A stretch of DNA of 64,000 nucleotides from positions 800,150 to 864,149 of the forward strand of contig NW_015172563.1 in NCBI RefSeq assembly GCF_001447785.1, read 5' to 3'. The position numbers and the translations under genes are program-made. This DNA comes from Gekko japonicus (taxonomy: Eukaryota). The notes under the pieces are model-generated. The model was not told where the DNA came from. It ran no database searches and saw only the letters and a list, made by a program, of their open reading frames with translations. This document shows, in pieces, positions 15,503-57,869 of the stretch. The first letter of the stretch is position 1, and each line of letters begins with the position of its first letter.

Positions 15503-15572
15503 CCACAAGGACCTGAAGGAGGTCCAGCTGTGATGAAAGGAGCTTACTTAACTGACAAATGGAAAGAACAAG
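15503..15572 (+). pseudogene. ARG1: Arginase-1 pseudo-exon 2
   Basis: After TAG, reads PQG-PEGGPAVMKGAYLTDKWKEQ(G), versus recalled human exon 2 [24 protein letters not shown](E). Same phase-1 end; the donor position reads GAAACT instead of GT. Confidence 0.7.
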
Positions 15573-17076: not shown

Positions 17077-17089
17077 AAATGTTTTTATT

Positions 17090-18968
17090 TTATTTTAATT
17101 TTTTTTAAGCCCCCGGAGGGGATTTTTTATTAATTTTTTAAACACTACAAAAACTAGAACAGGAAAAAGGGAAAGGGAAAGCTACATATAAGGGAGAAAG
17201 TAAAGAACCCACAACTAACTAAAAACCCAAGAGAGGAGATCTCCAACTAGCTTTTTATACTTCATTCACTTTTCATCTTTGTACTTATGAACTGTGTCAA
17301 TCTTTTAACCCTTTTAACTATCCCCAGTTACATTTAATTGCCCAATAACAGTGCCCCCCATCATCCCCTAGAACCCAAGTTCTCAAAGGCACAATTCAGA
17401 GTCCTTCAGCCTTTACTTCTTCTTCTCTCTCTTCCGCAGTTTGTAGGAACTTTTGGGGGCTGATGCCCCCTGCTCAGACAAAGAGTCCTCACCAGACGAA
17501 CCAGTTTCCAGCTCTCCACCGGACTTATTGTCCTCTTTTTTTTCCTCTCGTCCTCTGGCCTTCCCAGCTGCTCCTTTAGAAACTCTTGAGCTTTAAGAAC
17601 AGAGTCAATCTTGACCTTCTTCTCTTTGATCTTGAATATTACGCCTTCTGGAAACAGCCATTTATATCCAATTGAGTTTGTTTGGAGGAAAAACACAAGT
17701 TCTTTGTATTTCTTTCTGCATTGTCTTACTTCAAATGGAATATCCTTTAGCGTTCTGACAGCATTCTCCCCCACCTTCAGGGGTGTCGCAGCAACTGCTT
17801 TCAGGATAGCATCCCTGACGTGCCTCTTCGAGAATCTTACTACAATTTCCCCAGGCAGATTATTTTTCTTTATGTATCCTGAATATGACCTGTAGGCCAC
17901 ATCCATGTCGTTGAGTAGCAAGTCCGCCTTTATATCTGCTACTGGGGCAAGTAGCTCACTCATAAGTTCTTTAAGATTCTCTCCTCTTTTCTCGGGCACC
18001 CCTTGGAAGCGCAGGACCATATTAGCCTTATCCATTTGCACTTGCAGCATCTGATCTTCCAAAGATACAGTTTTCTTTTCCAATTTTTGTACTTTTCCCC
18101 TCACTTTCTGCATTGTCTCAGCCATTTCCTTTACTTTCTCAGCATCCTGCTTCATTACTTACATACTTGAATCAAATCCGTTATTTGCGTTTGTTGAGCA
18201 GTAATGCTTGTTGTCACAACTTGCAGCTGCTTTTGTTGTGCAGTAATATTCGCTGTTACAACAGACATCTGTTCTTTAAAGACATTGAGCTGTTCCAGCA
18301 GAGGGCGCATGACCTCTGTCATCGCCTTCGTCGTCTCACTGGTCGTTTTGGGCTTCGGGAACTCTAGTTTCGCTTTTAAAAGTTTCTCTTTGTCTCTGTC
18401 CCTCTTCCCCGCCATTTTTCTCGTTTGTTTGCTTTCACAATAAATTTTAAAGTCTCTGAATATGCGCTTATCTGTATAGCTCGATGGGTGAGTACTTCTG
18501 GGCAATTTCGTGTTTATTCTTCCACTCCCTCCCCCTTTCACTCAATGATTTATGGGCATGGGAGGCCTCCCTCCCACTACTCGCTTCTGCCATTTTGCCG
18601 CTTCGGGTAAGGAGTGTCTTTTTGTTTAAAAATCAGTTCTCATTTGACTCACATTCATAGTTGGTCTTCCGACCCCTCTTCATTCATCATTTCAAACGCC
18701 TGATCTCCTGAGCTTGATCCGGCTAGCTTCACTTGTACCATCAGGTCTCTCAGCTGGATGGACCACTGGAGCAAGGGGGAGCCTCGATTCTCTGGCATTT
18801 GGCCAGAGAAGAGGCTACCCCCTCAAAGTTCCTTGGCCAGGTGCCCTTCTCCGGGCTCCTGGGGTGGTTACGAGCCTGCTCACCCCCTCCATCCGCCAGA
18901 GCACGGAGACACCCCCGGGAGGTCCGGGAGGTGAGTCCGTGAGCGTGCCGCCATCAACCAGAAGTTCT
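17090..18968 (-). mobile_element. ORF1-only L1-like retroposon (HAL1-like), copy A
   Basis: 13-bp TSD AAATGTTTTTATT (17077-17089 / 18969-18981); frameshifted ORF1 18415->17406 with L1 ORF1p RRM/CTD-like motifs (LRFQGVPE, KDIPFE, YKWLFPEG); AATAAA and A-tail; no ORF2. Confidence 0.85.
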
Positions 18969-19289
18969 AAATGTTTTTATTAACAGCATCAAAAACAACA
19001 AAACAGTCAATTTTGGAATTAGTAACAAAAATAAAAAACAGAGCAAATTTCCATGCACAAGTCGACTACTGTCTTGGTATTCAGTTTAAAATAGTGCTCT
19101 CCTACCATCCTTTCTCAATACTAATAAGAAAAGCCTCTAGTTTGATATCTCTTGGATAGGATAAAATAGAATGCTAATTTAGCATTTCCACATGATGTTT
19201 CATACTTTGCAATAACCAGGCATTGTCCTTTGTTTTGAATACTGTTCAGTGGCCCCTTTAAATTCAGTTACTGTTCTTTGCCTCTACAA

Positions 19290-19429
19290 GTTTAGTCTCA
19301 GCAGTGGATATAATGATCAACCCAGCTCGCGGTAAGACACCAGAACAAGTGAACACCACTATGAGCTCAGTTATGGCAATAATTCTGTCTTGTTTTGAAG
19401 CTTCATTTAGAGGATCCTCATTGTTCTAA
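19290..19429 (+). pseudogene. ARG1: Arginase-1 pseudo-exon 8 (last exon)
   Basis: LVSAVDIM-INPARGKTPEQVNTTMSSVMAIILSCFEASFRG versus recalled human [42 protein letters not shown] (about 20/42 identical). Acceptor reads CAA instead of CAG, the Glu277 codon is missing, and it is convergent with MED23 as in mammals. Confidence 0.85.
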
Positions 19430-19801
19430 TTGCCGCGTTTCATATTATCAAAGTAGACTCTGAATACATATCATGGTTTAAGCTCTAACATGTTTCTAGG
19501 AGTTCATTTTATGAACTGCTGGTTAAGTAGATAAGCTGCTAAGTAGGTAATTTTATGTTTACTACAGCCACCGTCTCTCATTTTGGTACAAATGTGGTGC
19601 AGAGCCATATGATCAATTTTTAAAAATACAAGTATAAATTTATATCCAAGGGTTTAGCTTGTGAATTCAAATGAACATTTGGATTCTGAAAAAAACTAAA
19701 CTTCAGGGCAGCATTTTGTCTTCCTCTTATATACCAGTGAATGGCCTGGACGCACTCTGTCTTACTAAACTCATGAAGCTAATAGATAAAATGAATGGTA
19801 T

Positions 19802-21053
19802 TGTTGTCCTACGAGGCCCCTATTATGCTTTTATGAACTCATAAGTTATGAAAAACCTGACCTGTGCTAGTTGTGTGCAAAAGGGACTGAACTATAAGGT
19901 CGCCATTCAGACAGCTCTTCTTCTGGCTAGCCTGGGCCAGCTGCGTCTTTCTTCTTCTATCTTCCTGTCTTCTTTGTTCTCGGGTCGCTTTGCAGCTCGC
20001 CTGAATCCGTCCTGCTGGAAGCAGGGCCGGCAAAGAACTGGATGGTCAGCATGGGGATAAGCCCCTCCCCGCCCGGATCAAAGCCTGAAGCCGACCCTGA
20101 AGGAAAGGGAGGAGCTTATCCCAGAAGTACAGAATGTACCACGACACAACCATTGGAGAACAGTGTGTCCATGGGCCCTGTATGTCACCATCCCTCTTAC
20201 TTGCAGTGAAATGAACCAGCTTCCTAGCCACACACACACACAGCATTGAAAAGCCAGGCTGTTGCCATGCCAGGCAAGAACATAGGGGACCCAGACTCCA
20301 TGAAGGATCCCCTTCCTGTGCACGTAATCAACATGTTTGTCCCCACCTAATACATCACCTAGTTGAAACCGCAGACACGAGACAACAAGAGAACAATGCC
20401 TCTGGCCAGCAGAAGACATAATCCCATCAGGATGCCATTGTTTAACTTAGTTTCCCATTAGATTCAACATTGACCAGCCCTGTGAACCTTGGACCCCAGC
20501 CCCAGTCAACATATTTGGCCAAGGCAGGTAGCCAACCTCCAGCCCACCCCTCAACCTCCCTATAAAAGAGCTGTGCAGCACCAGCTCTCTCTCTCTGCTC
20601 CCCCACCCAACCCCTTCGTACCTGAAGTGTCGGACTCTTGGTTGCGCAGCCAGAGTCTTACCGTGAGCCTGCCGGTTCAGGACATGGACCCTTCCCCCAG
20701 TTATGGATCCCTTAACCCTCTCCTTTTTCCTGAGACTCACTCCTTCCGACTACAGGACAGGTAGAGTATCACCCATCATCGAAATCTCCTGCTAATGCGA
20801 ATGTGTTCTTTGTATTCTATCTATATTTCCTAGATACTGTGTAATTGTGTGTGTGTAAGTGTTATTGTATGCCTGAAATAAAATTAGTAAACAAAATCAA
20901 TTTATACTGTCATCAGTCTCAGCGTCTATTTGGCGGGTCTGGAGAATTCTGCACCCCTGTATACATAGATTCTTGCCCCCGTATTTGCCTATTGCCTGAT
21001 TTAAGCTCATGACTCCCCAAATTAAATAACGATTCAAGGCAATTTGGCTAACA
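19802..21053 (+). mobile_element. Solo LTR related to the 3.2-kb LTR
   Basis: TGTT...AACA termini, 4-bp TSD GTAT, TATAAAAG at 20561, AATAAA at 20877; shared GCAATT(T/C)GGCTAACA end. Confidence 0.82.
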
Positions 21054-21100
21054 GTATTACCCTCAAATAATTTGGATGAACTATGCATAAATAAATAATT

Positions 21101-21106
21101 TTTATT
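21101..21106 (-). terminator. Candidate MED23 polyadenylation signal
   Basis: AATAAA on the minus strand ~900 nt past the stop, at the end of an AT-rich, repeat-free 3' UTR-like stretch. Confidence 0.55.
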
Positions 21107-22005
21107 AAACAATGTTATCAGTGCTACCATATATGAACAATATTTTACAAATCTTTACATTTTCATTAGATACCAAACAACATCTCATTAAAAAAAAGCC
21201 ACCAGACCAAAAAAAATAAAATGTGAAAAGTAGTACTACAAATCTAAATTAAAGTTCAGTTATTGCTAAAATTCAATAGCTGGGTAACAAATTGTAACAA
21301 CAGTAATAAAGGCCCCAGAAATAAAACTCTTAAATATATGTATTTTATACATAATTACACTTCAGAACTTGGAGGGGATATGAAAGAGGCCTGTTCATCC
21401 AGCAGATTTATTGTCCTTGATTTGCACAGCCAGTGTCTTTACTACCATGTACTGTCCTGGTCTTCAGGAAGGCTGTTGGAAAAGGTTACGGTCGGCATAA
21501 TCAAAATCTGACCCCGCAGGATTCCAAGTCTACCTTAAACCAGTTCCCAAAGATACTGCAACTAGTTGGATTTAAATCAGCCTGCTAGTCAATGGGATTT
21601 TAACATATTCTTGTTAAAATCTGAGGATCTCAGTCTTTGCAAAATGATGTCAGTGGAACAAGAAAAGTGCACATGTTGTTCGCAGTTTGTATTGTAAAGA
21701 TTTGCAAGATTAAAAGTGAACACTGCTGAACAATAGTACCATTGACAAGAAAAGTGAGGAACAAATAAGGAAAATAACTCCTGGCATTTTTTTTACAGCA
21801 GTCAGCTATTCAGATATCCACTGATTGAGTTCCTTTGATCAGACTAGTGGTAGAACATGCATATGCAGAAGTCAGCAAGGAACGCTGCAGTGGAATTTGT
21901 TCTGAATGCACTGTTGCTCTTCAAAATGGACTCACATTGGGTCAACTTTCATCTTGGATAACATCAGATTTCCTTGGCACAAGAGACACAAGTTGGAGCC
22001 TCATT

Positions 22006-22176
22006 TTACTGAGACACTGGCAAAGCAACATTAACCGGCACCTGATTAGGCTGAGGTGCTGGAGACACATTGCTTATAGGTTGCTGGGAAACAGAAGACG
22101 ATTCCATTTTGGTGATATGCATGAACCGTAGGCGAAGTTTCAAAGCGGGTCTCAAGTTGCAAATGATTTTCTCAAC
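22006..22176 (-). CDS. MED23: MED23 terminal coding exon (VEKIICNLRP...ALPVSQ*)
   Basis: AAG acceptor, TAA stop at 22006-22008. Confidence 0.95.
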   Translation of the reverse strand, partial: VEKIICNLRPALKLRLRFMHITKMESSSVSQQPISNVSPAPQPNQVPVNVALPVSQ

Positions 22177-28100: not shown

Positions 28101-31100
28101 TGCAATAAAAACCAGCACAATAACACAGGAAACAATGCAATACTATTTGTTTAAAAGCTGCCTAATTTTTTTCACAGACATTACAATGACAGACCAGTTC
28201 CCTGTATAAGAAGTGCTCTGCTGATCAACTCCATTTTACAACAGTCCTTTTTCCTCTACAAAAATATCCTGAACAGCTCATTTTTACACATTCGGCAGTA
28301 AAAAAAGTAAAATGGAAAAGGTCATATCCTCCCCACCCTAATTTTCCTATTATATTTGTTAGCATTTTAGCGTCTCATTTTAAACATTATTTTCATCAGT
28401 GGTACAGGATTACTTGTCTTTTCAATTAGTCAGAATCAAGGCAACTTACAGGCAAGAATCAAGGCAACTTACAGGCAAGGCAGTGATAATCAGTCCAATT
28501 GCATTCATCCATGCTGTTATATTGTCTCTAGGAACTAATGGCTGACTGGAGAAAGTGAGATAAAAAAGGACTCATGTACTTAATATCAGCAGTTTATGGT
28601 AGAGATACATACCATTTTTAACATAAAACTGTCTCTATTTTTCAGAAGAACTTCAACCTACCTTTTCAGCACAACATTCAGAAGGGCATTTCCTACATCC
28701 TTTCCTGGAACAGCCAATGCCATGAGTTCAACACAGGTAACATGCAGTGCATGGGCAGCTGGGTTAGGAAACTCATTGAACCTCCAGTCACAGTTTGGGA
28801 ATGGTGACTTGCCAGCCATCGGTGAGAACGATTAAGGTAATCAACTGATATGACATAGGAAGCAGCTGCCATTACAGGGGCTGTTTCTTTTTTGGAGAAC
28901 TGCAGTGGTACAGGCTAGAGCTTCCATTTGGTCCTTAATATGTAGGAACAGACTGTAAGCTCAAAAATCATGGGATAGAAGGACAAGTCCTTTTATGGAT
29001 CAAAAACTGGCTAGTTCATAGAAAACAGAGAGTGAGTGTAGGTGGGCAATTTTCTCAGTGGAGGGTGGTAAGCAGTGGGGTACCGCAGGGATCAGTACTT
29101 GGTCCACTGCTTTTTAACTTGTTCATTAATGATTTGGAGATGGGAGTAAGCAGTGAAGTGGCTAAATTTGCGGATGATACAAAGTTGTTCAGGGTGGTGA
29201 AAACCAGTGAGGATTGTGAGGCACTCCAAGGGGATCTGTCAAGGATGGGCGAGTGGGCGTCAACATGGCAAATGGGGTTCAATGTGGCCAAGTGCAAGGT
29301 GATGCACATTGGAGCCAAAAATCCTAAATATAAATACACATTGATGGGGTCTGAACTGGCAGAGACTGAGCAAGAGAGAGATCTTGGAGTTGTAGTGGAT
29401 AACTCACTGAAAATGTCGAGACAGTGTGTGACTGCAATAAAGAAGGCCAATGCTATGCTGGGGATTATTAGGAAGGGTATTGAAAACAGATCAGCCAATA
29501 TAATAATGCCCCTATATAAATCAATGGTGAGACCTCATTTGGAATACTGTGTGCAGTTCTGGTCACCACACCTTAAAAAGGATATTATAGCTTTGGAAAA
29601 AGTGCAGAAAAGGGCAACTCGAATGATAAAAGGGTTGGAACACTTTCCCTATGAGGAAAGGTTAAAGCGCTTAGGGCTCTTTAGCTTGGAGAAAAGACGA
29701 CTGAGGGGTGACATGATCGAGGTTTATAAGATTATGCATGGGAAAGAGCAGGTAAAGAAAGAGGTACTTTTCTCCCTTTCTCACAATACAAGAACTCGTG
29801 GGCACTCCATGAAACTGCAGAGCGGTCGGGTTAGAACGGATAAAAGGAAGTACTTCTTCACCCAAAGAGTGATTAACACATGGAATTCACTGCCACAGGA
29901 AGTGGTGGGTGCTACAAGCATGGACGGCTTCAAAAGGGAATTAGATAAGCATATGGAGCAGAGGTCCATCAGTGGCTATTAGCCACAAGGTATAGCTAGG
30001 GGCTCTGGGGCAAGTGATGCTCTGTCTTCTTGGTGCTTGGGGGGGGGTCAACAGTGGGAGGGCTTCTAATGTCCTGGCCCCACTGCTGGACCTCCTGATG
30101 GCACTGGTATTTCTGGCCACTGTGTGACACAGAGTGTTGGACTGGATGGGCCTTTGGCCTGATCCAACATTGGCGTCTCTTATGTTCTTATGTTCTTATG
30201 TTCTTATTAACTATTATGTTGTATGTTCAGGCCATTCATGCATGGCTCATATATGCAGATCTGAGCAAAACACAGTGCAGAAACCTAGGTTACATAGTGT
30301 CTGCTGCTATTTTCTCTTCTAGTCATTTGAGCACCTTGGTACTATAGCGTAATCAATGTAGAGATTATGCATTTTCAAACAAATAATGATACGTATTATA
30401 CATTCTTAACATGTTTCCTCCACCCAAGATATTCCAGGTGGCTTGTTAAGAAAATGATTTGCCCCTGCTTCACATCCTTGATTTTTTTCTTGGCTAACAA
30501 TAATAATCTGAATGCCGCTCCTGAAAAGACAAAACTATGAATGGGTGGAGCGCAAAAAAAAGAAAAGCATCACAGCACAGCCAACTACAGATTAATTACA
30601 ATGCAAACAGGTGTCTCAATGGTTTTCTGATATTTTACCTACACTCACTATTATAAAAAAGGATATTATCGACCAGCCTTGCAATCAGTTTACAGTAATA
30701 TATGTCATCAGGGATCCATGGATTATCTTCTCGTGCATTCATAGCACATTTGAGGTAAATGTCACTCAAGCACCATCCTAGAGGCCGATTATCCTTAAGG
30801 GAACCAATGATGGCATGGACCAGTTTCCGTTTGAGGTTTGGACGGTCCCGGAGATGTCCTTCGTAGTAGTGAAGTGTATTGTACAAGTAGGTTACTGGAC
30901 GATCTGCAAGGAGACAACAGGGGTATTCACAAACTCAAAGCCAGGGTCGAGTACAGTCTGCACTACAAAAATGAAAATTCTGTACACAGGCAATTCAAAT
31001 AACACGACAAGGAATGCTCAATTTGTTGCTCTATAAATTACTAGCCTGATACCTGTGCTTCGCTATGGTATTTAACTTCCGTAAATCCAGTTATAATACT

Positions 31101-37100: not shown

Positions 37101-40100
37101 ACAACTCAGGGTATGTGAAGCCCAGTTATGAGGGGTAAAGCTCATGATAGTCTGAAGTATATCTTTGCACCAAGTTCCCTGAATAGAATCTGATCCTGTG
37201 AAAAAATCTGAAAAAGAACATGTAAAAGTAATAGAGTCTTCGTTTCATATAGCTTAAACATATACAATGAATTAGTAAAATGCCATTTCCACATTCTATT
37301 GACACCATATGCATGATTATTGTTCTGACTGTATTCCACCAGTTTCCATTGTTTGAATTTAAGTCTTGTGTTTCCAAAAGGCTCAAGATTCAGCTGAACT
37401 GAATCCAGAACACTCTACACAAAATCCACAGCACCATTTTATTCCAATCACAATGCCTTTACTGAAAGGCGGGGTTTCGGCGAGCTGATGGCGGCTGTGT
37501 CTCCTGGGATCTCCCAGGGAGGCGGCTCACAAACCAGCAGTTAGAGAGGGGGTGCGAATGTCCGCGCCCCCCAGGGACCCTTGCGAAGGGTCTCTAGTCA
37601 TGGAGCGCTGAGGGTCGCCTCTTTCCCGGCACGCTGTCGGGAAATTGAGGCGTCTCTTTGCTCCAATGGTCTCTCTGCTGTGTTCCGGCAAGGACTAAGC
37701 TACGCACACCCCATCAAGCGAGGGGCGGTCAAGCGGCAAATAAGCATATCTGTCGGCGAGATCTACTTGATCTACATATGAAGAGTGAGTAAAGTTGAAA
37801 CGAAACAACAAAGCGAAAGCCCCCCCCCCCCGGGGAAAAGTGAGGGGAGAGAGGGGACTCTCCTCCGCTAAGAACTGTTTATAAGCGTTACAGAGGTAGA
37901 AGAAAGGGGGGACATGTTTAAAAGCAGCAATGGACTATACGGAGAGATTCCAGGAGGCAGTTAAGCGTTGAAGCAAGTTTTCGGGACTTTGGTAAACTTT
38001 GTAAAAGTAAACATCCTTAAAAATGGTGATGGACAACGTAGTAAGAACAAGCAGTGATATCCAAGCTTTCTCCAGGAAGTGGAAGAGCTGCTGGTTAACC
38101 ACCTGACTGGAAATAATCATAGACTCTTGCAAACTGTGTCTTAAGCCTTTGTTCCCTGTTGGTATAAACGAGGTACTATGCAAGAACTGTGCTACATGTC
38201 AGCTGTTGCTTTTAAAAGGACTGTGTTAATATTGGAGAAGCGTCTAACCAATGATCATAGGGGCTTCCAGGATCGAAGAGGAGAGTCAAATGGGCATTTG
38301 CAATTCAAAGGGCCTGTATGCAGACCATAAGCAAGACTTAAAGCGAAGGAGTATTCTCCATGGTTATATCCTGATTAAGTCTGCTGGGCAATAAGGTGAC
38401 GAGACTCTCTTCAAGTCGGCCAGTGAAAAGCAAATTGGAATGACCCCTATGATTGAAGGCAAGAATTTAAGCGGAACAGTCCTGGAAAAAGGAGAAGGGA
38501 CTTTGTTTTGAGATGGCCAGTTCCTGATACAGCAAGATGGTGCCACAGGGAAGAAGAAAGAGAAAAACAGCAATGGAAGAGAAAATGAGATTGTGTAATA
38601 TCTACTGAGGGAGATTTATTGTTAATTTGCTTTTAATGGTGGAGGGAAAAATAATGGTTAAATGAGATGCCATTGTTCTCTGTAATGTGTGTCTAAGTTA
38701 AATAGCGATTCTCCTGGACTACTCTTCATATAGTCAGATTTGTTAGGATGTTTTTACAAGCTATGATGATGACTGATCACTCTCAATGTTAAAGAAAGCA
38801 AATTTTTTACAAGCTGCATGTGACCTCCAACCCTTGGGTTTTTAGTGGGTTTTCTTTTCTTTCTCCTATAGTGTGTAGATTCCCTCCCTAATTTCACTGT
38901 AGTTTTTAGTAAATGCAAATAAAAAATCCCTTACAGGGGGCCATTAAAAAAACACAATGCCTTTACTGAAAACTGAAATACATGGGGGGGGGGATCTAAC
39001 CTTACATCACAGTAGGAAATCAAGAATATTCATGTTGTAAGCCACTTTGAGTTCCACGTGGGAGAAAGTTGGTTAATAAATGGTTTAGATATAAATACAG
39101 CTCTTTGTATAATGAGTAAAAGACTAGCCTTCACCCCACTTGCTCAGGAGCATCTCTGTTGTTTCTCCACTGTAAGAATAATGGATGTGGATTTCTTTTT
39201 CAAATCTGAATACCACTGTCAAACATTCAGACTCTTCGAGGTTTTATGCTTTTTTACCTTTTTCATTTACTAAAACAAATAAGAACTTTGTTAATAAATT
39301 GGAGAGAATTTTATAATTTCATCTGGGTAACCTTTATTATTGTGAAAACTTTTGTGAACAATCAGTTCTGCTTATGCTGTTTTCCTTTAGTTGGTTATAA
39401 CTGAAAAACAACTTTCTTGATCTAGACAGGATGTATCATTAGGCTGCAAACATGTACCACTTCCTGGATTAGAAGCTGGAAGCACAAATCAGTTATGCAT
39501 AGATATAGGTGCCAAATAAGAATGCAATCACACTGCGCTGCTTTTGGTTTGAGAATGGGATGTGCACTCAAATGGGTATTCAAATATTCATTCTCACACA
39601 ACTAGTAAAATATTAACACTTTATGTTTAGCTACAGTTGAATGGAGGCAAAGTTTTTCTTATCCTGAAACATTAACTTGGCTAATTCATCTTGTTAAGTA
39701 TAACGTGCCGTATTAATGAACTACATTAATCATTTTAATAATGTAGAGAAAACATCAATGACTAAAAAAAAATTGAAATGATTTTTATTGCTTTTATCTC
39801 TACATCCTACATTCTACACACTACAACCTAAAATACAGAGTAGGCAAGGATCATTGATGGTCTAATTTCGATTTTTTGATATTTCCCTAGTACTTAAGAT
39901 TACAGTATAATAGCTTTGTAGAGAGAAAGCATACAAAAAAAGTAAAATTAAATAGAATAACATAAATGTGTATTATTACGCATAAAGTACAAAGGAGATT
40001 CTCAGATCTTCATTTCGTTGCTTTCTTTCCTTTACGTTTCTTCTTCTTCTCCCAGGGGAGTTTAACTTTATATGATCTAGGGGCGGCTGCCCCCAGTTCA

Positions 40101-43100
40101 GATTCAGAGTCAAAAATCTCGCCAATAGATGAAGATGAGCTTATCTCATCTTGTTTGCCTTTATCTTCTATGGCGTTGTTGTCCTCTGCTTTTCCTTTTT
40201 CCTTCGCTGGGCTTTGATGGTGCTTCAGAAATAGCTCAGCCTTAGTAAGAGAGTCAATCTTTTCTTTTATCCCTTTAAAGTTGAAAATAAGTCCTTCTGG
40301 AATAATCCATCGATAAAGAATTGAATTTCCCTGTAAAAATGATGTGACATTTCTATATTGCTTCCTCTTCTTCTGTATCTCAAATGGAACATCTTTTAAA
40401 ATTTTTATTTCTTCTCCTTGGATTTTTAGGGCTATCCCATTAGTCACTTTAAGTATCAAGTCTCTTGTTGATCTTTTAGAAAATTTTACAAACATTTTCC
40501 CTGGCAGATTATTTTTCTTGACAAATTCTGGATACGTTCGATAAACCATGTCCATATCTGCTTGTAATAATTCACTTTTACAGTTTGCCAGGGGAGCCAA
40601 TGCTTCACTTAAGATCTCTTTTAGATTTTCATCTTTCTTTTCTGGGATGCCTTGAAATCTTAAAACATAATGATCTTTCCACTTGTAGCTGTAATAGTTA
40701 TTTTTCGGAAGCCCTTTCTTTATCCGCTGATTCCATTCTTTGGTCCAATGCTTTTGTCTTATGGTCAACCTTTTTCAGCTTTTTGGCTGTCTTCTCTGTT
40801 TTTATCTTAGTTTCTTTAAGTTCTTTCTGTAGAGCATCAAAGTTCTTGTTGAGGTTAGTCATCTGGTCCAGCAGAGGGCACAGTGCTTCAGAAATCGTAT
40901 CGGCTATGTCTGTAGCTGGTTCCGGTCTGGTGACTGGTGATGTTAAGCTGGTAGTTCCTGTAGACGATTTCCCTCTGGGTGACATTTCCCCCCTCGATGA
41001 GACATTGTTTATGTTAAAGGTAAAAGTTCATAGAAGTTCTGAGATTCTTCTCTGCAATATAAGATATAGCCCTCTGCACTCGGCGTGGGTTAGGTGACAT
41101 TCTTGCTTCAAAATTTCGGCTTACCTTTTACATTTTGTTACTTTTCTTGCTGTTATGTCTAGGATAGGGTTGTTCCTCCCCCTCTGGGAGGGTTCCCCCC
41201 CCTTCTCTAGATTTAGGGTTTCGCCATCTCTTTGCCGGTTCCCACTTTAGCGCTTATTATTTTACAGTTTCATCACTCACATTTCTTGTTGATAGTTGTC
41301 AGTAGTATAGAGAAGGTCTCTGTTGCTTAGATCCTTTGCTCGCTCTGGTTCCAGAAAGCGCCTCTGAGCGCCATTGCTGGCCTCGGGACGGCGGAACCTA
41401 ATGGGGCAAAAAGGAGCCTCAATCCCTTAGCCGCGGCTCTGGGAGTGGCTCCTTTCGTGCCCCAGGCTAGAAGCCCCCTACAAGTGCTCCAGGGGAGGCT
41501 GAAAACGTCTGGTCTCCCACCCTGCCACCCTGATACGGATTGCACCCATCGGAGCTCGATGAGGTGTGTCCGTGCACAGGTCACCAAAACCGGAAGTCCT
41601 CAATAACTCTCAAAATTTTGAAAGATCTCAGTACTGCATTAATCTTTTGCTCTTTTTATACCTTCAAGAATTTTTCTGTTAGTGTTTATAACATTGTGAA
41701 AGAGTGTTACCTGTAACATGAGTCGCTCTTGCCAAAGTCAAAATAAGTGCCCTGTTGAGTTCCTCCGATTCTGCTGAAAGTACTGTTTTTGGTTCATTAA
41801 GGAAGCGAGTAAATTGTGGCTGGACCTCAGAGCTACCCAAGGCTGTGATCAGCCTCAGAGCTGTACTTTCAACACTGTAAAGAGAAGGTATGAGCACAAA
41901 ATGTATTTATTTTGACAAATGCAGGTAAAAAAGAGTAGCATTTTGGAGTCATTGTTTCAAATAAGATTTCAGTGTTGTGGCTTATATGAATTCACTCTGA
42001 GATGACCAGGACACATTTCTCTCTGTTTATATTATTATTTTCCCCCAATTGAAAAAAGAATATGTAAGGCACAACCAAGTCAGTGCTAAGAGAATTGGTA
42101 GAGGTCATTTCACACTCAGCCCAAACCACAGAGTACAGTCAACTGGTTGCTCAACTGATCCCTACTTACTGATAAGTATATTTCTATCATATGCTGACAA
42201 ACATCAATTGGTCTCATTTACAATTTCTATATTTTAAGGGTTTGCATTCCAGGTATTTTAAGTGCATACAAAAAAATTAGCTCAGTGATTTGCCTGTAGA
42301 AGAGCACTAAGAATCAGGCTTCACTGTAAATGACATTCTACTTTCCACTTTGCATGTCTGCTTACTATTTGTAAGTGGTATATGAAGTTGAGTGATGTTT
42401 TAGTAACAGACTGAAGAAAAGTACTTTCTTTACCTGCCCTTAAACAGTCCTGGCTCCATCCAAATGAGTATATTACAGCTCGTTACTATGGGAATTAGTC
42501 TTGCTAACAGAGCATTCAAGCCTTTTTTCTAGTCTTGTCTGCTTTTGATAATCTGAGCTTTTATCACTGCAATCGTAAACAGAGATACACACTTCTTAGT
42601 CCATTGAAGTCAGTGGGCTTAGAAGGGTGTAACTCTGTTTAAGACTGCATTGTATAACAATTCAAAATGTTATTTCCCCACCCTCTTCTATAGTCTGCAA
42701 AAAATGCTTTCACACATTGGGAGACTACATTGTCTAGAGGGTATGGGTCTGAATGCAGGAAATCCAGGTTGAAATTGCAGTCATAAATCTTAGTCGGTAG
42801 GATTTCTCACATTCTAAGTGGCTCTATGCTTTCACATGCAAGAGGTTTTCAGAAGCCCCCAGCACAGGATCTGTAGTGTTTGAACTGTTTTATTCTTGTT
42901 CCTCTCCCACCAGTCTCCTGATGTGTGCTGTGCCTCCAAAACAGAAATGGCAGTTTGTGGAGACAATACTTACCACAGATGAAGCTGATTCTGGTTGGTC
43001 TGTGGCACTGCAGCTAGAGAATGAAGATTACTCAGCAGCTGGACCCTGTAATGAGGCTGGATGTGGTGCATGCGATAGCTGAACATCTCCAATAGAGTGT

Positions 43101-46100: not shown

Positions 46101-49100
46101 GAATGAGGGATAGGAATCTGAAGTTTGGAATTGTCACTGTGAGCCTTTCTGTTCAGATGTATCCAGATACAGGTCATTGCAAAAGCATGCGTAGACTGGG
46201 GTTTGTTAATATCAGGCACAGGAATACACTGAGGAAAGAAGAAAAATGAATTCATTCTATTCAACTAGCATGATGCTAAGAATTCCCACGTAGGTATTTG
46301 GAATTGGTAAATCTTAATTTAGCAATGAACCGAGTTTGGAGACTGTACATCTGTGCAGGCAACTGTCCTTGGAAATTAGTAGGCATGTACTTACAGGCCT
46401 CTGCCTCACAGATCTTTCCAGTGACTAATTTTCAACCACTCTGCACAAGAATCAAGTGTCATAAGAACATAAGAACATAAGAGATGCCAATGTTGGATCA
46501 GGCCAAAGGCCCATCCAGTCCAACACTCTGTATCACACAGTGGCCAGAAATACCAGTGCCATCAGAAGGTCCACCAGTGGGGCCAGGACATTAGAAGCCC
46601 TCCCACTGTTGACCCCCCCAAGCACCAAGATGACAGAGCATCACTTGCCCCAGAGTCCCTATCTATACCTTGTGGCTAATAGCCACTGATGGACCTCTGC
46701 TCCATATGCTTATCTAATTCCCTTTTGAAGCCGTCCATGCTTGTAGCACCCACCACTTCCTGTGGCAGTGAATTCCATGTGTTAATCACTCTTTGGGTGA
46801 AGAAGTACTTCCTTTTATCCGTTCTAACCCGACCGCTCAGCAATTTCATGGAGTGCCCACGGGTTCTTGTATTGTGAGAAAGGGAGAAAAGTACCTCTTT
46901 CTTTACCTGCTCTTTCCCATGCATAATCTTATAAACCTCAATCATGTCACCCCTCAGTCGTCGTTTCTCCAAGCTAAAGAGCCCTAAGCGCCTTAACCTT
47001 TCCTCATAGGGAAAGTGTTCCAACCCTTTTATCATTTGAGTTGCCCTTTTCTGCACTTTTTCCAAAGCTATAATATCCTTTTTAAGGTGTGGTGACCAGA
47101 ATTGCACACAGTATTCCAAATGAGGTCTCACCATTGATTTATATAGGGGCATTATTATATTGGCTGATCTGTTTTCAATACCCTTCCTAATAATCCCCAG
47201 CATAGCATTTGCCTTCTTTATTGCAGTCACACACTGTCTCGACATTTTCAGTGAGTTATCTACTACAACTCCAAGATCTCTCTCTTGATCAGTCTCTGCC
47301 AGTTCAGACCCCATCAACGTGTATTTATATTTAGGATTTTTGGCTCCAATGTGCATCACCTTGCACTTGGCCACATTGAACCCCATTTCCCATGTTGACC
47401 CCCACTCGCCCATCTTTGACAGATCCCTTTGGAGTGCCTCACAATCTTCACTGGTTTTCACCACCCTGAACAACTTCGTATCATCTGCAAATTTAGCCAC
47501 TTCACTGCTTACTCCCAACTCCAAATCATTAATGAACAAGTTAAAAAGTGTCAGAGGCAAATCTGCATAAAAAGCAAACCGGGATCGGCATACCTTGTGT
47601 GTTAATGATACTTGCAGTGGTTTGCAGGGTAAAATTACTTACTGAAATATTAAATCCTGACCATATTTCAATACAACAGCACTATGGCAGAACCCAAGTT
47701 CACATGATTATTCTGAAAAATCCCAGCAACACAAAATGTAGGATTCAGATCAGAACAGTGTTTATTCAGCAAGTGATACAACCTTACATAGTCATGAGCA
47801 AGTTGCATTCAAGAGGGAAAAAGAGAGAGTAAAAAGCTCTTTTCATCCTCAGTCAGGATGGCACCCTAAACCACACCGCCTTCTGTCTGGAACTGCTACC
47901 CAATCCATTTCTATTAAGCCACAGCCTTCTCATTTTTCAAATGTCTCCCCAAACACTTCTTCTTTAGCAAAACCTGTTCTGCACTATCACAACTTTTCCT
48001 ACCCTGTAAACTGATCTGGCTTTATCCAAAGAAGGAAGGTGTGAAAATAAGCAGACCAAGCTCCACCAACAGAATGTTATTAAGAACAACGTGTTCATCA
48101 GTAAACAAAACCCCAAGAGGATCAGCTGCACTATTTATGACCTGAAACACAACAAACCTTTCTGAACATTGTTCTTGCATCGAGTCAACAGCAAATGCTC
48201 CACTCTTAGCTACACGAGTATCTAGCCTTTTGTCATAACAGCTTTGTTGTCTTTATTCCTTCTTCATACATGTTGAAAATTCTACAATTCATTTTTGTTC
48301 TTTACAAACTAACTTGTGCTCTTTACAAACTAACTGAAGTTTAGAAGGGTCAGGTCTGAATTCCTGTTTTGGTGTTTGTTTACCTGTAGAGAGAAGGCAT
48401 TATGCTAGATTTCTCTACACACACAAACTACTGACCAAGATGGCAGTCATCTGGCATGTCTAGCAATATCCTTTCTACAGTTTAACTGCTCTACCTAGAA
48501 CCAGAGTTCTGCACCTTTTCCTAATTTATTTTAAGGCTTTCTTTTTTACAAGAGGGGGACATCTTATAATTCCTCTTTCCCTTTTCTGAAAACCCCCACA
48601 GCCTTGCCCCTTTTCCTGCTTCCTTCTCTTCTTCCCACACACCAGCCAATCTACCTTTATTTGTCCCCATTTTCAACTTTCTTTTCGTCTCTCCCGGCAG
48701 CCTCTCCCTGGGAAAATGCTGGATGGTTCCAGCTGCTGGGCCATCTGGACTGCAGCCAGTTGCATGGTGCTGGCCCCTAGGCCAGGCCTTATTGAGAATT
48801 AGATTAAATACTGAAGAAACNNNNNNNNNNNNNNNNNNNNNNNNNNNNNNNNNNNNNTCTAACACGATTTTGATTCACTGCATCTTTCTTTGTTACTGTT
48901 CTATGCATTCTGATGAACTATCATTTGGGACGCATTTACAAATACTGGCTCTGACCTTTAGATACAGCTATGAATGTAATTGTTTCTCCTGCCTTAAAGA
49001 TACTCTTGACACATGTCCTGTCACCTACCTGTAGCTATCTAAATTTAATAGTGTTCCTTTTTATGTTGCCAAGACTGCTTTGCTTCTGGTTTTTCTTGGC

Positions 49101-54700: not shown

Positions 54701-54764
54701 ATAGGAGTGCAGGAAAACCAGAGAAAGTGACGTTGGTGCAGAACTTGGCTTCCATTTATAATTT

Positions 54765-54765
<1 letters not shown>

Positions 54766-54822
<57 letters not shown>
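54766..54822. repeat. (TA)n(CA)n microsatellite
   Basis: Seen directly; lies inside the TSD of copy C. Confidence 0.95.
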
Positions 54823-54825
<3 letters not shown>

Positions 54826-55084
54826 CTAAAAAGGAGAGAATTTTATTGCTTTTAATTTTCAGAAAAAAAGGGGGGTATATAGTGGGGTTAAGAAAAGAGT
54901 GAGTGATGCTCATATTAGTATGTTAATCTTTTGTTAGTAGTAATCATATCTTCTTTGGCTTCTTCCGTGAGTTGATCAATCGTCTTTCATCTTAACCAGT
55001 AAAAAATAAAAATGTTAATGTGTTAATAGTGTCCTCTTGGTTTATTGTTAATAAAGTCTTTTTATGCGCTTTCTGAACCAATCT

Positions 55085-56047
55085 TCATGTTCTGGGCTGT
55101 CTTCCTTTTACATCTCTCAGATTGTAAGATGGACCCTTCGCTGCTCCTTCATCTTCTGGATTCTTGTCTCCCTTCTCTGAGCCGCTGTCTTCTTCGTTGC
55201 TAAGTACTTCCCCTTTAGCGAGTGCTGCTTCCTCTGGACTGGCGTGTCTCTTCAAAAAGTCTTGAGCTTTGAAAATGGAGTCAATCTTTTCCCTTTTATC
55301 TTTAAACTTGAAGATAAGTCCTTCTGGAATCAACCATCTATAGCTAATTTGATGGTTTTGTAAGAACAAGGTCAGTCCTTTATAGGCCTTCCGCTTCATC
55401 CGAATTTCAAATGGAACATCTTTTAAGATTCTAACTGTCTGCTCTTCAATCTTCAAAGGCATTGATGAAGACGCTCTTAAGATTTGATCTCTGATCCTCT
55501 GCTTAGTAAACTTGACCACCACTTCTGCCGGCAAATTATTCATCTTTGTAAAATTGGAGAAGGCTCTGTACACCACATCCATCTCCTTGCTTAATTTATC
55601 CGCTTCCCAGCTGGTAAGTAATGCCAAAGCCTTTGCTAGCATACTTCTGAGATCTTCTTTTTCAATTTCTTTTATGCCTTGAAATCGGAGAGTTAAGTTT
55701 GTCTTTTCCATTTGAAGCATCAATAATTTTTTATCTTGCATTTCTTGATGTTTCTCAATTTTATTGACCACCTTCTTGACTTTTAGAGTCTCTTCCGTTG
55801 AAACCAGACATTTCTGCGCGATTTCCTCCATCTTCTTGGCTGTATCAGTCAACTGTCTCTGCTGGTTGCTGAGAACACTTTCCATGCTCGACAACGTTTG
55901 ATTTATTTTTTGCATTTGCTCCAGCAGAGGGCGCAGTATCTCGCTTTCCTGTTGATTGACAGCCGGCTCCACAAGGAGGGAGCCAGAACCGGAAGTTCCT
56001 CCCAGCTTCTTCGGCAGCTTCTCCGGGAACTTTTTTTGCCCCGACAT
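55085..56047 (-). CDS. Intact 320-aa L1 ORF1p-like RNA-binding protein (coiled coil, RRM, CTD)
   Basis: Heptad-like N-terminal half, then LRFQGIKE...MDVVYR...VVVKF...LKDVPFE...YRWLIPEG; homologous to the ORFs of copies A and B. Confidence 0.8.
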   Translation of the reverse strand: MSGQKKFPEKLPKKLGGTSGSGSLLVEPAVNQQESEILRPLLEQMQKINQTLSSMESVLSNQQRQLTDTAKKMEEIAQKCLVSTEETLKVKKVVNKIEKHQEMQDKKLLMLQMEKTNLTLRFQGIKEIEKEDLRSMLAKALALLTSWEADKLSKEMDVVYRAFSNFTKMNNLPAEVVVKFTKQRIRDQILRASSSMPLKIEEQTVRILKDVPFEIRMKRKAYKGLTLFLQNHQISYRWLIPEGLIFKFKDKREKIDSIFKAQDFLKRHASPEEAALAKGEVLSNEEDSGSEKGDKNPEDEGAAKGPSYNLRDVKGRQPRT

Positions 56048-57869
56048 CTTTGTTTTATTGTTTACTTTTAAAAGTTCATGCCGCGCAGCTTAAGAATGAG
56101 TCTTTCTGCCTCTCCTTAAACAATTCACCAAAAGGTAACACCACTCTTCCAAAATCTCACTCCCCCCTTCTTCTTTCTGGTAATACAATCTCAATTTGTT
56201 TGGGAGGGGGGCTCCCCCCTCCTCCCTTGCACTTTTTCGATAGGGGGGAATGCGCTTTATCTCTTTTCCCACTTTTCCGATCGTCAACTCACGGTTTCAG
56301 CCGTTCACTTTCTCTTTTAAATGTTCTTCCGCTTCATCACTCTGCGATGTCTGGCAGCTCTGCTAGTCCCTGTGCAGGGCACAAACACGGCAGGGCCATT
56401 GGGGCATGGGGCGAGCCTCAATTTCCGACCTTCGGGCCGGTAAAGAGGCACCTCCCCTGTGCGCCCCAGTTCGGAGCCTTACTCTAAGGCTCCTTAGGGT
56501 CTCCGCTTGTGCAGATTCCCCCCCTTAACCGCGCGTGGGCGAATCACCTCCGGGAGCATCCCAAAGTTGCGACCGCCATTCGCAGAGACCAAACCGGAAG
56601 CCGGCTTCCATTTATAATTTCTACCAGTTACGTAAGCTTGAGAGCATGTGGGCAATGCCTGCTAAAACCTGAATCTATAGAGGTGCTTGAATCAGATTTT
56701 CAGTGGTGATGCATGACTTTGGATTGGGTCCACGGCAGCATTTCCATGAGCCCAAGGACTTCCGCCTGCAGAACACAACTCTCTCACCTCCCCAACACTG
56801 CAAACCCAAATACATCCAGAAGCAAAGCCGAGTCAACATCCATACCTTTTTATGACTAGCAAACCCAGAATAAATTATGCAGAAAAATACATATTCAATT
56901 ATGCAAACTGAAAGAAATCTGCTCACAGAATCCTGCATTTCTAATAATAAAATTAGGACTAGGGATGGGCACGATTTGGACCACAAACCAAATTTTGTCA
57001 CAGACTGGGGTCTGGTCCATGGTTCATTTGCAGTAAGACACAGGGACGGGAAAACAAACCTGCCCCAAAAACTGGAATCAAGAACCAAAAGGGTGAGAAG
57101 AAAGTCTAATGAAGGGCCAATATTAAAAACCTAGTTAAAACTTATAATATATAAAAATACACGCATTTATTAGAAAGACAGTTAAAAACATACATAAGGG
57201 CCCAATGAAAGCCTTGTAAAAAAAGTGTAGCCTAAACACAAGGGCCAATAAACATGACCTGACACGTTTCTGCACTATTGGGGCCTTCTTCAGAGGTCAA
57301 ACAATATTGAGGTACATGTAACAATAATACATATTGCAATAAGATAACCAATAAGTGAATATTGGACTAAGAAGAGGAAGGTTAAGCAGCAAGAGCTAAA
57401 GACACATGACAAAGATGTTTGTGAGGCCTCAAAAGGTGAAAGTCATGTGTCTAGTGCCAAACGCACAGTTATTGAATTAGAACATCTTCCAATTTAGTTC
57501 CAAAAAGCACCTGTGTGGCTATCAAAGTCAGAGCTAGAGTGTCCTCAAGCAAACAGCTGGCAGCAGCTCCAAGGCCAGCAGAATAGAAAGGGGGAAGATC
57601 TGATATCTTCCTTCCCCTCCTTTCTGCTGGCAGCAGCTTCCCAAAGCCAGCAGAATGGAAGGGGAGGGAAGATCTGACCCCCCCTTCCTCTTTCTATATG
57701 TAATGCTTGAGGAAATTCTGTTTCACTGTATCTGAAGAAGTGTGCTTGCACACAAAGACTTATACCTTGAATAAAACTCTGCTGATCTTAAAGGTGCCAC
57801 TGGACTCAAACTTGGTTCTACTGTGTCAGACCAACACAGCTGCCTACCTGGATCTAGCATTAACTATGT

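What the first reader, a model, noticed from the sequence alone, without database searches (positions are those of the whole stretch)
18647..56292. Positionally conserved 5' splice-site motif (GTGAGT) 310-319 nt inside all four retroposons
Seen: a consensus donor GTGAGT lies 316 nt (A, 18652), 319 nt (B, 41280), 310 nt (C, 56292) and 317 nt (D, 37785) from the 5' end, although the 5' UTRs are otherwise hard to align; each is followed by a G/C-run stretch. These copies passed through an RNA intermediate yet kept the donor unspliced. Inference: a selected U1 snRNP-binding site (boosting promoter-proximal transcription or protecting against premature polyadenylation), or a regulated intron that separates translated RNA from retrotransposing RNA. 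This points to an undescribed cis-regulatory design.
Basis: partly seen in the sequence, partly recalled or inferred. Interest (0 to 1): 0.8.

Follow-up and report, generated by a model that had tools for sequence, protein, structure and literature searches.

The report
Conserved splice-donor motif in lizard half-L1s
Four very diverged ORF1-only L1-type jumping genes in this lizard-type genome all keep the hexamer GTGAGT, a perfect splice-donor/U1-binding consensus, about 310-320 bases into their leader. This is far more than chance allows, but I found no evidence that it is actually spliced.

Summary
GTGAGT lies at 18647-18652(-), 41275-41280(-), 56287-56292(-) and 37785-37790(+), 310-319 nt from the 5' ends of four retroposons bounded by target-site duplications.

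They are 1.5-1.9 kb ORF1-only ("half-L1") elements. Their 5' terminus matches the published lizard L1 clade-1 consensus. The leaders have diverged almost to random similarity. GTGAGT is still the only hexamer all four share at the same offset (4-9 of 2000 shuffles give any such hexamer). It is also the only GTRAGT on the sense strand of three of them. It sits where a CpG-rich first 300 nt gives way to an A-rich body. It is one of about six positional islands, so the leaders are not otherwise unalignable.

Function is unproven. About 3.3 Gb of RNA reads showed no junction, at low depth. No good acceptor precedes the ORF1 stop. No spliced DNA copy was seen.

The best reading is a selected, mostly unspliced U1-type site, parallel to the conserved donor in the human L1 5'UTR. 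A DNA-level factor site or a rarely used intron remains open. The assembly gap at 48821-48857 lies outside all four elements.

The parts
17090..18971 (-). Element A: ORF1-only L1-type retroposon. The 5' end reads (AG)AACTTCTGGTTGATGGCGG. ORF1 starts at ATG 18415 and is broken near 18155 (pieces 18541-18155 and 18155-17406). A-rich tail.
   Evidence: TSD about AATAAAAACATTT at 18972-18984 and 17077-17089, read from sequence. The boundary is uncertain by a few nt because the tail is A-rich.
18647..18652 (-). GTGAGT of element A, context AAT|GTGAGTCA, 317-319 nt from the 5' end.
39764..41599 (-). Element B: ORF1-only retroposon. The 5' end reads GGACTTCCGGTTTTGG. ORF1 is frameshifted (ATG about 41005; long piece 40768-40010). 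3' end and TSD are uncertain.
   Evidence: Only a weak 9-10 nt TSD candidate (..ATTGA) was read from sequence.
41275..41280 (-). GTGAGT of element B, context AAT|GTGAGTGA, 319 nt from the 5' end.
54766..56602 (-). Element C: ORF1-only retroposon with an open 320-aa ORF1 (56047-55085). The 5' end reads GGCTTCCGGTTTGG. (GT)n(TA)n tail. Perfect 19-bp TSD GAAATTATAAATGGAAGCC at 56603-56621 and 54747-54765.
   Evidence: ORF1p homology (profile against PDB 2ykp/2yko, E 5e-7).
56287..56292 (-). GTGAGT of element C, context ACC|GTGAGTTG, 310 nt from the 5' end.
   Evidence: RNA reads cross it unspliced at about 13 reads of depth.
37468..38952 (+). Element D: 1.48-kb relative with no open frame left. 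The 5' end reads GGCGGGGTTTCGG..ATGGCGG. Perfect 19-bp TSD CACAATGCCTTTACTGAAA at 37449-37467 and 38953-38971. Its 3' end is homologous to A's.
   Evidence: (71% identity to A's tail).
37785..37790 (+). GTGAGT of element D, context AGA|GTGAGTAA, 317 nt from the 5' end.
56203..56227 (-). G-run/C-run palindrome downstream of the hexamer in C (GGGAGGAGGGGGGAGCCCCCCTCCC). Counterparts: A about 18560-18575, B about 41165-41200, D about 37822-37868.
   Evidence: There is a 6-bp consensus hairpin with no compensatory changes, and fold z-scores of only -0.8 to -2.2.
56294..56602 (-). CpG-rich, GC-rich (55-66% GC) first ~310 nt of the leader, shown here for C. It carries the shared islands ATGGCGG, AGGGGG, GCCTCTT and ATTGAGGCTC and ends at the hexamer.
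   Evidence: The terminus matches the lizard L1 clade-1 consensus GACTTCCGGTGN8ATGGCG (PMC5381506).

Best explanation
The four elements are independent insertions of four deeply diverged lineages of ORF1-only (half-L1) retroposons. They carry a squamate L1 clade-1-type leader. GTGAGT is a selectively maintained island of that leader. It lies about 315 nt from the transcript start, at the 3' edge of the CpG-rich promoter segment, where the A-rich body begins. I infer that it works at the RNA level as a U1 snRNP-complementary 5' splice-site motif that is mostly not spliced. U1 recruited close to the promoter would favour productive transcription or shield the A-rich transcript from premature cleavage and polyadenylation, and the genomic (retrotransposing) RNA stays unspliced. 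Shown: presence, position, non-random conservation, uniqueness as a donor consensus, and the first-exon-like anatomy. Inferred: selection, U1 binding and the functional effect.
For: The hexamer is in all four copies at 310-319 nt. It is the only hexamer shared by all four within +/-10 nt. Any such hexamer arises in 0.2-0.45% of shuffles. Outside the islands, pairwise identity of the leaders is 0.52-0.64 against about 0.54 for shuffled sequence, and ORF1 proteins are only 41-43% identical. Neutral retention in four lineages is therefore implausible. There are about six conserved islands, and only 2 of 4096 hexamers are GTRAGT, so one island matching that consensus by accident has a probability of roughly 0.3% (my arithmetic). 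GTRAGT occurs once on the sense strand in B, C and D and twice in A. It sits at the switch from 55-66% GC to an A-rich body, like a first-exon/intron boundary of a CpG-island gene. G-runs follow it; from general knowledge, G-runs are typical intronic enhancers just downstream of 5' splice sites. AATAAA/ATTAAA hexamers lie downstream within the body in A (453) and C (544, 696, 838). RNA reads cross the site unspliced. Precedent: the human L1 5'UTR keeps a donor for about 46 MY, most transcripts stay unspliced, and mutating it lowers L1 RNA about 5-fold (PMC5860796).
Against: There are only four copies, one per lineage, so no within-family conservation profile could be made. All four have G at +3, although GTAAGT would bind U1 at least as well. 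This hints at a constraint other than U1 pairing (weak: about 1 in 8 by chance). The exon-side positions -3 to -1 are not consensus in any copy (AAT, AAT, ACC, AGA). Internal poly(A) hexamers are absent downstream in B (none until 1191) and D (none until 1450), so protection from premature polyadenylation cannot be universal. MAFFT does not consistently put the four hexamers in one column, so positional homology is by offset, not by context. The motif has no CpG, so it decays more slowly after insertion than the CpG-rich islands around it. There is no direct evidence of U1 binding.
Confidence: 0.4

Rival explanations
1. It is a DNA-level element, such as a transcription-factor or promoter-architecture site at a fixed distance from the start site, that merely coincides with a splice-donor consensus. 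This is what was argued for the human L1 donor inside the RUNX3 site.
For: The leader is an internal promoter with several other fixed-offset islands (ATGGCGG, ATTGAGGCTC, AAGGGGGA). These are presumably factor sites. Boissinot and Sookdeo 2016 argue that lizard L1 families depend on a shared host factor. All four copies keep G at +3 rather than alternating with GTAAGT. There is no splicing evidence. The human precedent was explained this way.
Against: The chance that one of about six islands equals GTRAGT is roughly 0.3%. No known factor motif was identified: an AP-1-like TGAGTCA occurs only in A. The flanks around the hexamer are not conserved, which is unusual for a site longer than 6 bp.
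Confidence: 0.25
2. It is the donor of a real, regulated intron. The only strong acceptor-like sites lie in the 3'UTR, so splicing would remove ORF1 and separate a short non-coding RNA from the full-length coding and retrotransposing RNA.
For: There is a single consensus donor per element. In every element the only Y-tract+YAG sites downstream of the donor lie 30-110 nt before the poly(A) signal: A 1752/1789/1817, B 1772, C 1777, D 1377/1403/1434 in sense coordinates. G-runs follow the donor.
Against: There are no junction reads in two RNA runs. The DNA contigs of X4 and the contigs of X1 (whose kind is only guessed) showed no joint starting at the donor. However, C's 3'UTR acceptor (about 54826) lay just outside the laid stretch, so this particular junction was not testable. 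No short spliced-form copy exists in the 64-kb window. The acceptor-like sites are T-rich/TGTAG repeats just upstream of AATAAA, which are as well explained as UGUA-type polyadenylation enhancers (general knowledge). No acceptor is conserved within the leader.
Confidence: 0.15
3. It is a relic or a coincidence, for example the fossil exon-1/intron-1 boundary of a host promoter captured by an ancestral L1 leader. It would be kept by inheritance, by its lack of CpG, and possibly by leader exchange between lineages, without a present function.
For: The first-exon-like anatomy fits capture of a host promoter. L1 leaders are known to be exchanged and replaced (PMC5381506). The hexamer is CpG-free. 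The sample is four copies.
Against: The rest of the leader is at near-random similarity, while six contiguous bases are invariant in all four. Shuffle probability is 0.2-0.45%. Recent leader exchange is contradicted by that same near-random similarity.
Confidence: 0.15

Closest known systems
Human L1 5'UTR splice donor G98U99 and SpIREs (Larson et al. 2018, PLoS Biol, PMC5860796)
   Same: A splice-donor sequence inside the leader of an L1-type element is conserved over long evolutionary time. It is retained unspliced in nearly all retrotransposed copies, and most transcripts are unspliced.
   Different: The human donor is at nt 97-99 and is embedded in a RUNX3 core site. Its acceptors (622, 790, 976) and its spliced genomic copies (about 2% of full-length copies) are documented. 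Here the motif is at ~315 nt, no acceptor or spliced copy has been found, no overlapping factor site is recognised, and the carriers are ORF1-only elements of a squamate.
Lizard (Anolis) L1 clade-1 5'UTR (Boissinot and Sookdeo 2016, PMC5381506)
   Same: The 5' terminus follows GACTTCCGGTG-N8-ATGGCG, the start is CpG-rich, and leaders keep conserved motifs across very diverged families.
   Different: The published leaders are about 1.3 kb with two CpG islands. These are 555-594 nt with one CpG-rich segment. The paper describes conservation of the first ~120 bp and does not mention splicing, introns or a motif near 315 (0 hits for 'splic' and 'intron').
Half-L1 (HAL1) ORF1-only non-autonomous L1 derivatives of mammals (mentioned in PMC5753468 and PMC4161310; not read in detail)
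   Same: The elements have a leader, ORF1 and tail without ORF2, and TSDs showing mobilisation by LINE machinery.
   Different: The host is a squamate. There are four lineages with 41-43% ORF1 identity. HAL1 is not known to me to carry a conserved donor motif.
Retroviral major splice donor in the 5' leader, e.g. HIV-1, where U1 binding also silences the 5' LTR poly(A) site
   Same: A GGTGAGT-type donor lies roughly 300 nt from the cap. It is kept in the unspliced genomic RNA and has a U1-dependent function apart from splicing.
   Different: Retroviruses have defined acceptors and spliced subgenomic mRNAs. None is shown here.
Promoter-proximal 5' splice-site effects, U1 telescripting and the U1-PAS axis (my own knowledge; cited as references 41-42 in PMC10915761)
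   Same: A U1 site within the first few hundred nt of a Pol II transcript, upstream of an A-rich body that contains poly(A) hexamers.
   Different: That mechanism was described for host genes with introns. It is not demonstrated for any LINE leader, and it is untested here.

Membership tests
ORF1-only (half-L1 / HAL1-like) L1-derived retroposon | Encodes an L1-type ORF1p (coiled coil, RRM, CTD) | tested here: met
   A profile of the A, B and C ORF1s plus P0001 and P0002 hits human LINE-1 ORF1p structures 2ykp/2yko at E 4.7e-7 to 5.7e-7 over profile positions 55-237. The single sequence gives only E about 0.1. Pfam gave no hit. D has no open frame.
ORF1-only (half-L1 / HAL1-like) L1-derived retroposon | No endonuclease/reverse-transcriptase ORF between ORF1 and the tail | tested here: met
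   The elements are 1.48-1.88 kb between TSDs, with 260-350 nt from the ORF1 stop to the tail. The RVT_1 hits in the window lie elsewhere, at 29032-29982 and 46676-47560.
ORF1-only (half-L1 / HAL1-like) L1-derived retroposon | Target-site duplication and an A-rich or simple-repeat tail (target-primed reverse transcription) | tested here: met
   C and D have perfect 19-bp TSDs and A has one of about 13 bp. B is unclear.
Squamate L1 clade-1 leader (Boissinot and Sookdeo 2016) | 5' terminus GACTTCCGGTG-N8-ATGGCG | tested here: met
   B reads GGACTTCCGGTT, C GGCTTCCGGTT, A AACTTCTGGTT (CpG>TpG), and D is degenerate. ATGGCGG is at 17-24 in A, C and D (consensus).
Squamate L1 clade-1 leader (Boissinot and Sookdeo 2016) | Long (~1.3 kb) leader with two CpG islands 300-400 bp apart | tested here: not met
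   The leader is 555/556 nt in A, C and D and about 594 nt in B. There are 13-22 CpG in the first 320 nt and only 6-9 in the next 280.
Functional spliceosomal 5' splice site (intron donor) | GT plus U1-complementary consensus at +1 to +6 | tested here: met
   GTGAGT is in all four copies. Positions -3 to -1 are non-consensus.
Functional spliceosomal 5' splice site (intron donor) | Downstream polypyrimidine tract and YAG acceptor at a conserved place | tested here: inconclusive
   There is none between the donor and the ORF1 stop. Acceptor-like sites occur only in the T-rich 3'UTR just before the poly(A) signal.
Functional spliceosomal 5' splice site (intron donor) | Junction reads in RNA | tested here: inconclusive
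   No joint appeared in RNA runs X21 and X22 (about 1.68 and 1.63 Gb read) over window 54850-57100. Depth at the leader was about 5-25 reads, mostly under 90% alike, and the two directions were equal. C's 3'UTR acceptor lay outside the stretch.
Functional spliceosomal 5' splice site (intron donor) | Spliced retrotransposed copies (SpIRE-like) in DNA | tested here: inconclusive
   No joint with the donor boundary appeared in the contigs of X4 or X1 within the laid stretch. The window holds no extra leader copy. Only one element and one window were examined.
U1 snRNP telescripting / promoter-proximal U1 site | U1 snRNP bound at the site, and cryptic poly(A) sites downstream that become used when U1 is blocked | not testable with these tools
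   Only sequence is available. AATAAA/ATTAAA hexamers lie downstream in A (453) and C (544, 696, 838), but none before 1191 in B or before 1450 in D.

The most novel reading that the evidence does not exclude
Squamate retroelements of unrelated classes may have converged on carrying an unspliced U1-complementary motif at a fixed place in their RNA. Here it is the L1/half-L1 leaders, and per an unchecked note of this scan also DIRS right ends. The distance from the transcript start, rather than the homologous position, would be what selection keeps: alternative alignments place B's hexamer about 20 columns away from C's, with an offsetting upstream insertion. The motif would make an intronless retroelement transcript look like a host pre-mRNA to co-transcriptional surveillance (premature termination, HUSH-type silencing of intronless units) while the RNA stays unspliced for retrotransposition.
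Probability: 0.1. Interest if true: 0.75.

Novelty: new member of a known kind. Interest (0 to 1): 0.42.

Why it matters
L1-type elements must be transcribed in full and exported unspliced, although their A-rich bodies invite premature polyadenylation and their intronless state marks them for silencing. If lineages that have otherwise diverged to random similarity keep a U1 site at a fixed distance from the start, that site would be a simple, testable cis-element by which LINEs use the host splicing machinery without being spliced. It would also offer a second reading of why the human L1 keeps its own 5'UTR donor. If instead it is a factor-binding site, it marks a shared host dependency of many squamate L1 lineages. 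Boissinot and Sookdeo predicted such a dependency but did not locate it beyond the first ~120 bp.

Tried and rejected

2. An unbiased leader pattern, without the hexamer, scanned in metagenome contigs gave six hits, all bacterial chance matches.

3. The ORF1 profile in viral contigs found no relative.

4. Supplementary sequences of Boissinot and Sookdeo 2016 are not held.

5. An nhmmer profile and sensitive blastn for further leader copies in the window found only the four.

6. Rfam found no family anywhere in the window.

7. A conserved RNA structure involving the hexamer was rejected. RNAalifold finds only a 6-bp G/C hairpin without covariation and leaves the hexamer unpaired. Folds of single copies have z-scores of -0.8 to -2.2.

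8. An upstream ORF ending at the TGA inside GTGAGT was rejected, because the frames disagree between A and D (and reading of the sequence).

9. An AP-1 site (TGAGTCA) is present only in A.

10. HUSH evasion by a bare donor is weakened. Seczynska et al. report that a spliced stuffer with 5'ss, branch point and 3'ss did not protect, whereas intron sequence did (PMC8770142).

11. The family-wide variant profile from read laying showed only 40 of 928 differences. None lay in 56287-56292, which proves nothing.

Full report
**Observation.** The hexamer GTGAGT is present at all four stated places: 18647-18652 (-), 41275-41280 (-), 56287-56292 (-) and 37785-37790 (+) (sequence). The hexamer is not enriched in the window as a whole: 37 hits against 29.8 +/- 5.3 expected.

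I fixed the element ends independently.
- C starts at 56602. It is flanked by a perfect 19-bp duplication, GAAATTATAAATGGAAGCC, at 56603-56621 and 54747-54765.
- D starts at 37468. Its perfect 19-bp duplication, CACAATGCCTTTACTGAAA, is at 37449-37467 and 38953-38971.
- A starts at about 18969-18971, with a duplication of about 13 bp.
- B starts at 41599 with GGACTTCCGG. Its 3' end is uncertain.

**The assembly gap.** The gap at 48821-48857 lies between B and C, 6-7 kb from either and inside none of the elements. The finding's long span is only the envelope of four separate sites, so continuity across the gap has no bearing on it. I did not try to fill it.

**What the four retroposons are.** They are not full L1s. 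Each is 1.48-1.88 kb from duplication to duplication and consists of four parts: a leader of 555/556 nt (A, C, D) or about 594 nt (B), one ORF, a 3'UTR of 260-350 nt, and an A-rich or (GT)n(TA)n tail.
- The ORF is open in C (320 aa), broken in A and B, and gone in D.
- A profile of these ORFs plus two database relatives matches the human LINE-1 ORF1p structures 2ykp/2yko at E about 5e-7.
- The reverse-transcriptase hits in the window lie elsewhere.

They are therefore ORF1-only "half-L1" elements. Several earlier notes of this scan describe such elements for the same lizard-type genome, and I re-derived the structure here. The four are deeply diverged: ORF1 proteins are 41-43% identical, and blastn finds only 150-180 nt of similarity between them. 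Their 5' termini fit the published consensus of lizard L1 clade 1, GACTTCCGGTG-N8-ATGGCG. Their leaders are less than half as long as the ~1.3 kb reported for that clade (PMC5381506).

**Is the conservation more than chance?** Yes.
- An exhaustive scan of all hexamers in the first 600 nt found GTGAGT to be the only one present in all four leaders within +/-10 nt of the same offset.
- With a tighter 560-nt cut, at least one such hexamer arose in 4 of 2000 dinucleotide-preserving shuffles and 9 of 2000 block-wise shuffles.
- The leaders are otherwise almost saturated. Global pairwise identity is 0.58-0.63 upstream of the hexamer. Downstream it is 0.52-0.57, except 0.64 for the C-D pair. Shuffled partners give about 0.54.

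Six invariant contiguous bases in four such lineages therefore argue for purifying selection in the master elements.

Two qualifications apply. First, GTGAGT is not the only landmark. ATGGCGG (~20), AGGGGG (~80), GCCTCTT (~152), ATTGAGGCTC (~180) and AAGGGGGA (~435) are each shared by three of the four copies at fixed offsets, and the ORF1 ATG is fixed at 555/556. The leader is a length-conserved mosaic of islands, and "otherwise hard to align" is only partly true. Second, the hexamer has no CpG, so it decays more slowly after insertion than the CpG-rich islands. For example, CTTCCGG has become CTTCTGG in A.

**Does it look like a splice donor?**
- GTRAGT occurs once on the sense strand in B, C and D and twice in A.
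- With about six islands and 2 of 4096 hexamers being GTRAGT, an accidental match has a probability of about 0.3% (my arithmetic).
- The hexamer lies exactly where the composition switches from 55-66% GC and CpG-rich to an A-rich body. This is the arrangement of a first-exon/first-intron boundary in a CpG-island gene.
- G-runs and a G/C palindrome follow at +36 to +126.

Against a classical donor:
- The exon-side positions are non-consensus in every copy.
- All four copies carry G at +3.
- MAFFT does not reliably place the four hexamers in one column. One alternative alignment pairs B's GTGAGT with GTGAAC in C, and C's GTGAGT with GTAAAA in B.

**Is it spliced?** I found no evidence that it is.
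- Scanning for a pyrimidine tract plus YAG found no acceptor-like site between the donor and the ORF1 stop in any element.
- The only such sites lie in the T-rich 3'UTR, 30-110 nt before the poly(A) signal. There they form T-runs and TGTAG repeats, which are as well explained as polyadenylation enhancers (general knowledge).
- My single read-laying run covered element C (window 54850-57100) with two raw RNA-seq runs of the same species, one DNA contig set and one contig set whose kind is only guessed.
- The RNA runs (about 1.68 and 1.63 Gb read) gave no joint anywhere. About 13 reads cross the hexamer unspliced in X21.
- Depth over the leader was only 5-25 reads. Most reads were under 90% alike, so they come from relatives. 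Both directions were equally represented, so neither strand nor a true RNA origin is certain.
- The contig joints listed for X4 and X1 do not start at the donor and do not have GT..AG ends on the element's strand.
- A limitation of my own making: I started the stretch at 54850 to avoid the microsatellite tail. C's 3'UTR acceptor-like site (about 54826) therefore lay outside it, and a donor-to-3'UTR junction could not have been reported as a joint.
- The summed contig word depth of X4, the contig set guessed to be DNA, is lowest of the whole element in the bin holding the hexamer (3,425, against 43,000-130,000 in the first 230 nt). One related contig shows a same-length but diverged replacement of 56258-56324. 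The hexamer thus sits in the most variable part of the leader.

**Structure.** RNAalifold on the -60 to +140 region finds only a 6-bp G/C hairpin without compensatory changes, and the hexamer is unpaired. Single-sequence folds are not unusual (z -0.8 to -2.2). Rfam finds nothing in the window.

**Comparison with what is known.** The nearest documented case is the human L1 5'UTR donor G98U99. It has been conserved about 46 MY, is unspliced in most transcripts, and spliced copies (SpIREs) are about 2% of full-length insertions. Its mutation lowers L1 RNA about 5-fold. The authors attribute its retention to an overlapping RUNX3 site (PMC5860796). Boissinot and Sookdeo (PMC5381506) describe conserved 5' termini and alignable leaders in lizard L1 and infer a shared host factor, but they do not mention splicing or a motif near 315. 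HUSH-type silencing of intronless units is counteracted by intron sequence even without splicing, but not by a stuffer carrying only splice signals (PMC8770142). This weakens a simple "intron mimic" reading. An unchecked note of this scan reports a U1-complementary motif at DIRS right ends in the same genome, also without spliced reads. I use it only as a lead.

**Verdict.** The most likely reading (about 0.4) is a selected, mostly unspliced U1-type site at the end of a first-exon-like promoter segment. The rivals are a DNA-level factor site that coincides with the donor consensus (0.25), a genuine but rarely used intron whose acceptor lies in the 3'UTR (0.15), and a functionless relic (0.15). 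The claim of an undescribed design is too strong given the human L1 precedent. For squamate L1-type elements, the motif appears undescribed in the literature I could search.

Noticed in passing
window 17154-17219 (A), 39828 (B), 54826 (C), 38845-38902 (D): In every element the only strong acceptor-like sites (T-rich tract + TAG) lie in the 3'UTR just before the poly(A) signal. A and D share CTTGGGTTTTTAG, and TGTAG recurs 2-4 times in A, B and D. They may be UGUA-type polyadenylation enhancers or real acceptors.
   Followed up: partly
window 17100-17135 (A, -) and 38915-38945 (D, +): A and D share a C-run/G-run hairpin directly after AATAAAAAAT (CCCCTCCGGGGG and CCCTTACAGGGGG). This is a candidate 3' recognition stem for the reverse transcriptase. 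Their last ~130 nt are 71% identical, although the rest of the elements is barely alignable.
   Followed up: partly
window 37468-38952: Element D has no open frame of 90 aa or more on its sense strand. It nevertheless has a perfect 19-bp TSD and the highest CpG count in its first 320 nt (22). It may belong to a non-coding derivative lineage rather than being an old decayed copy.
   Followed up: no
window 18415, 56047, 38022 (ORF1 ATG positions): Leader length is fixed at 555/556 nt in A, C and D despite near-random sequence similarity. A block just upstream of the ATG is also shared, roughly TTGTAAAAGTAAACA, but I read it by eye from the sequences and did not test it.
   Followed up: partly
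window 56258-56324: A contig of run X1 from a related copy aligns on both sides of this 67-nt segment, which holds the hexamer. It replaces the segment with a same-length, diverged sequence. This is the fastest-evolving part of the leader, and the sequence of the replacement was not available.
   Followed up: no
window 29110-30200 vs 46460-47548; also 8141-9498: Two L1 reverse-transcriptase fragments in opposite orientation are 97% identical over 1.09 kb. A third is 84-85% identical. These are 5'-truncated copies of a younger full-length L1 family, and none carries a leader.
   Followed up: no
window 15503-19429: Another first-stage note calls this span a unitary ARG1 pseudogene convergent with MED23. 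Element A (17090-18971) lies inside that span, so part of it is retroposon.
   Followed up: no
window 57054-57100 and 55230-55305: Very high summed contig depth appears at the right edge of the laid stretch, indicating another abundant repeat starting near 57000. The same is seen in the RRM part of ORF1, which is shared by many L1 lineages at 80% likeness or more.
   Followed up: no
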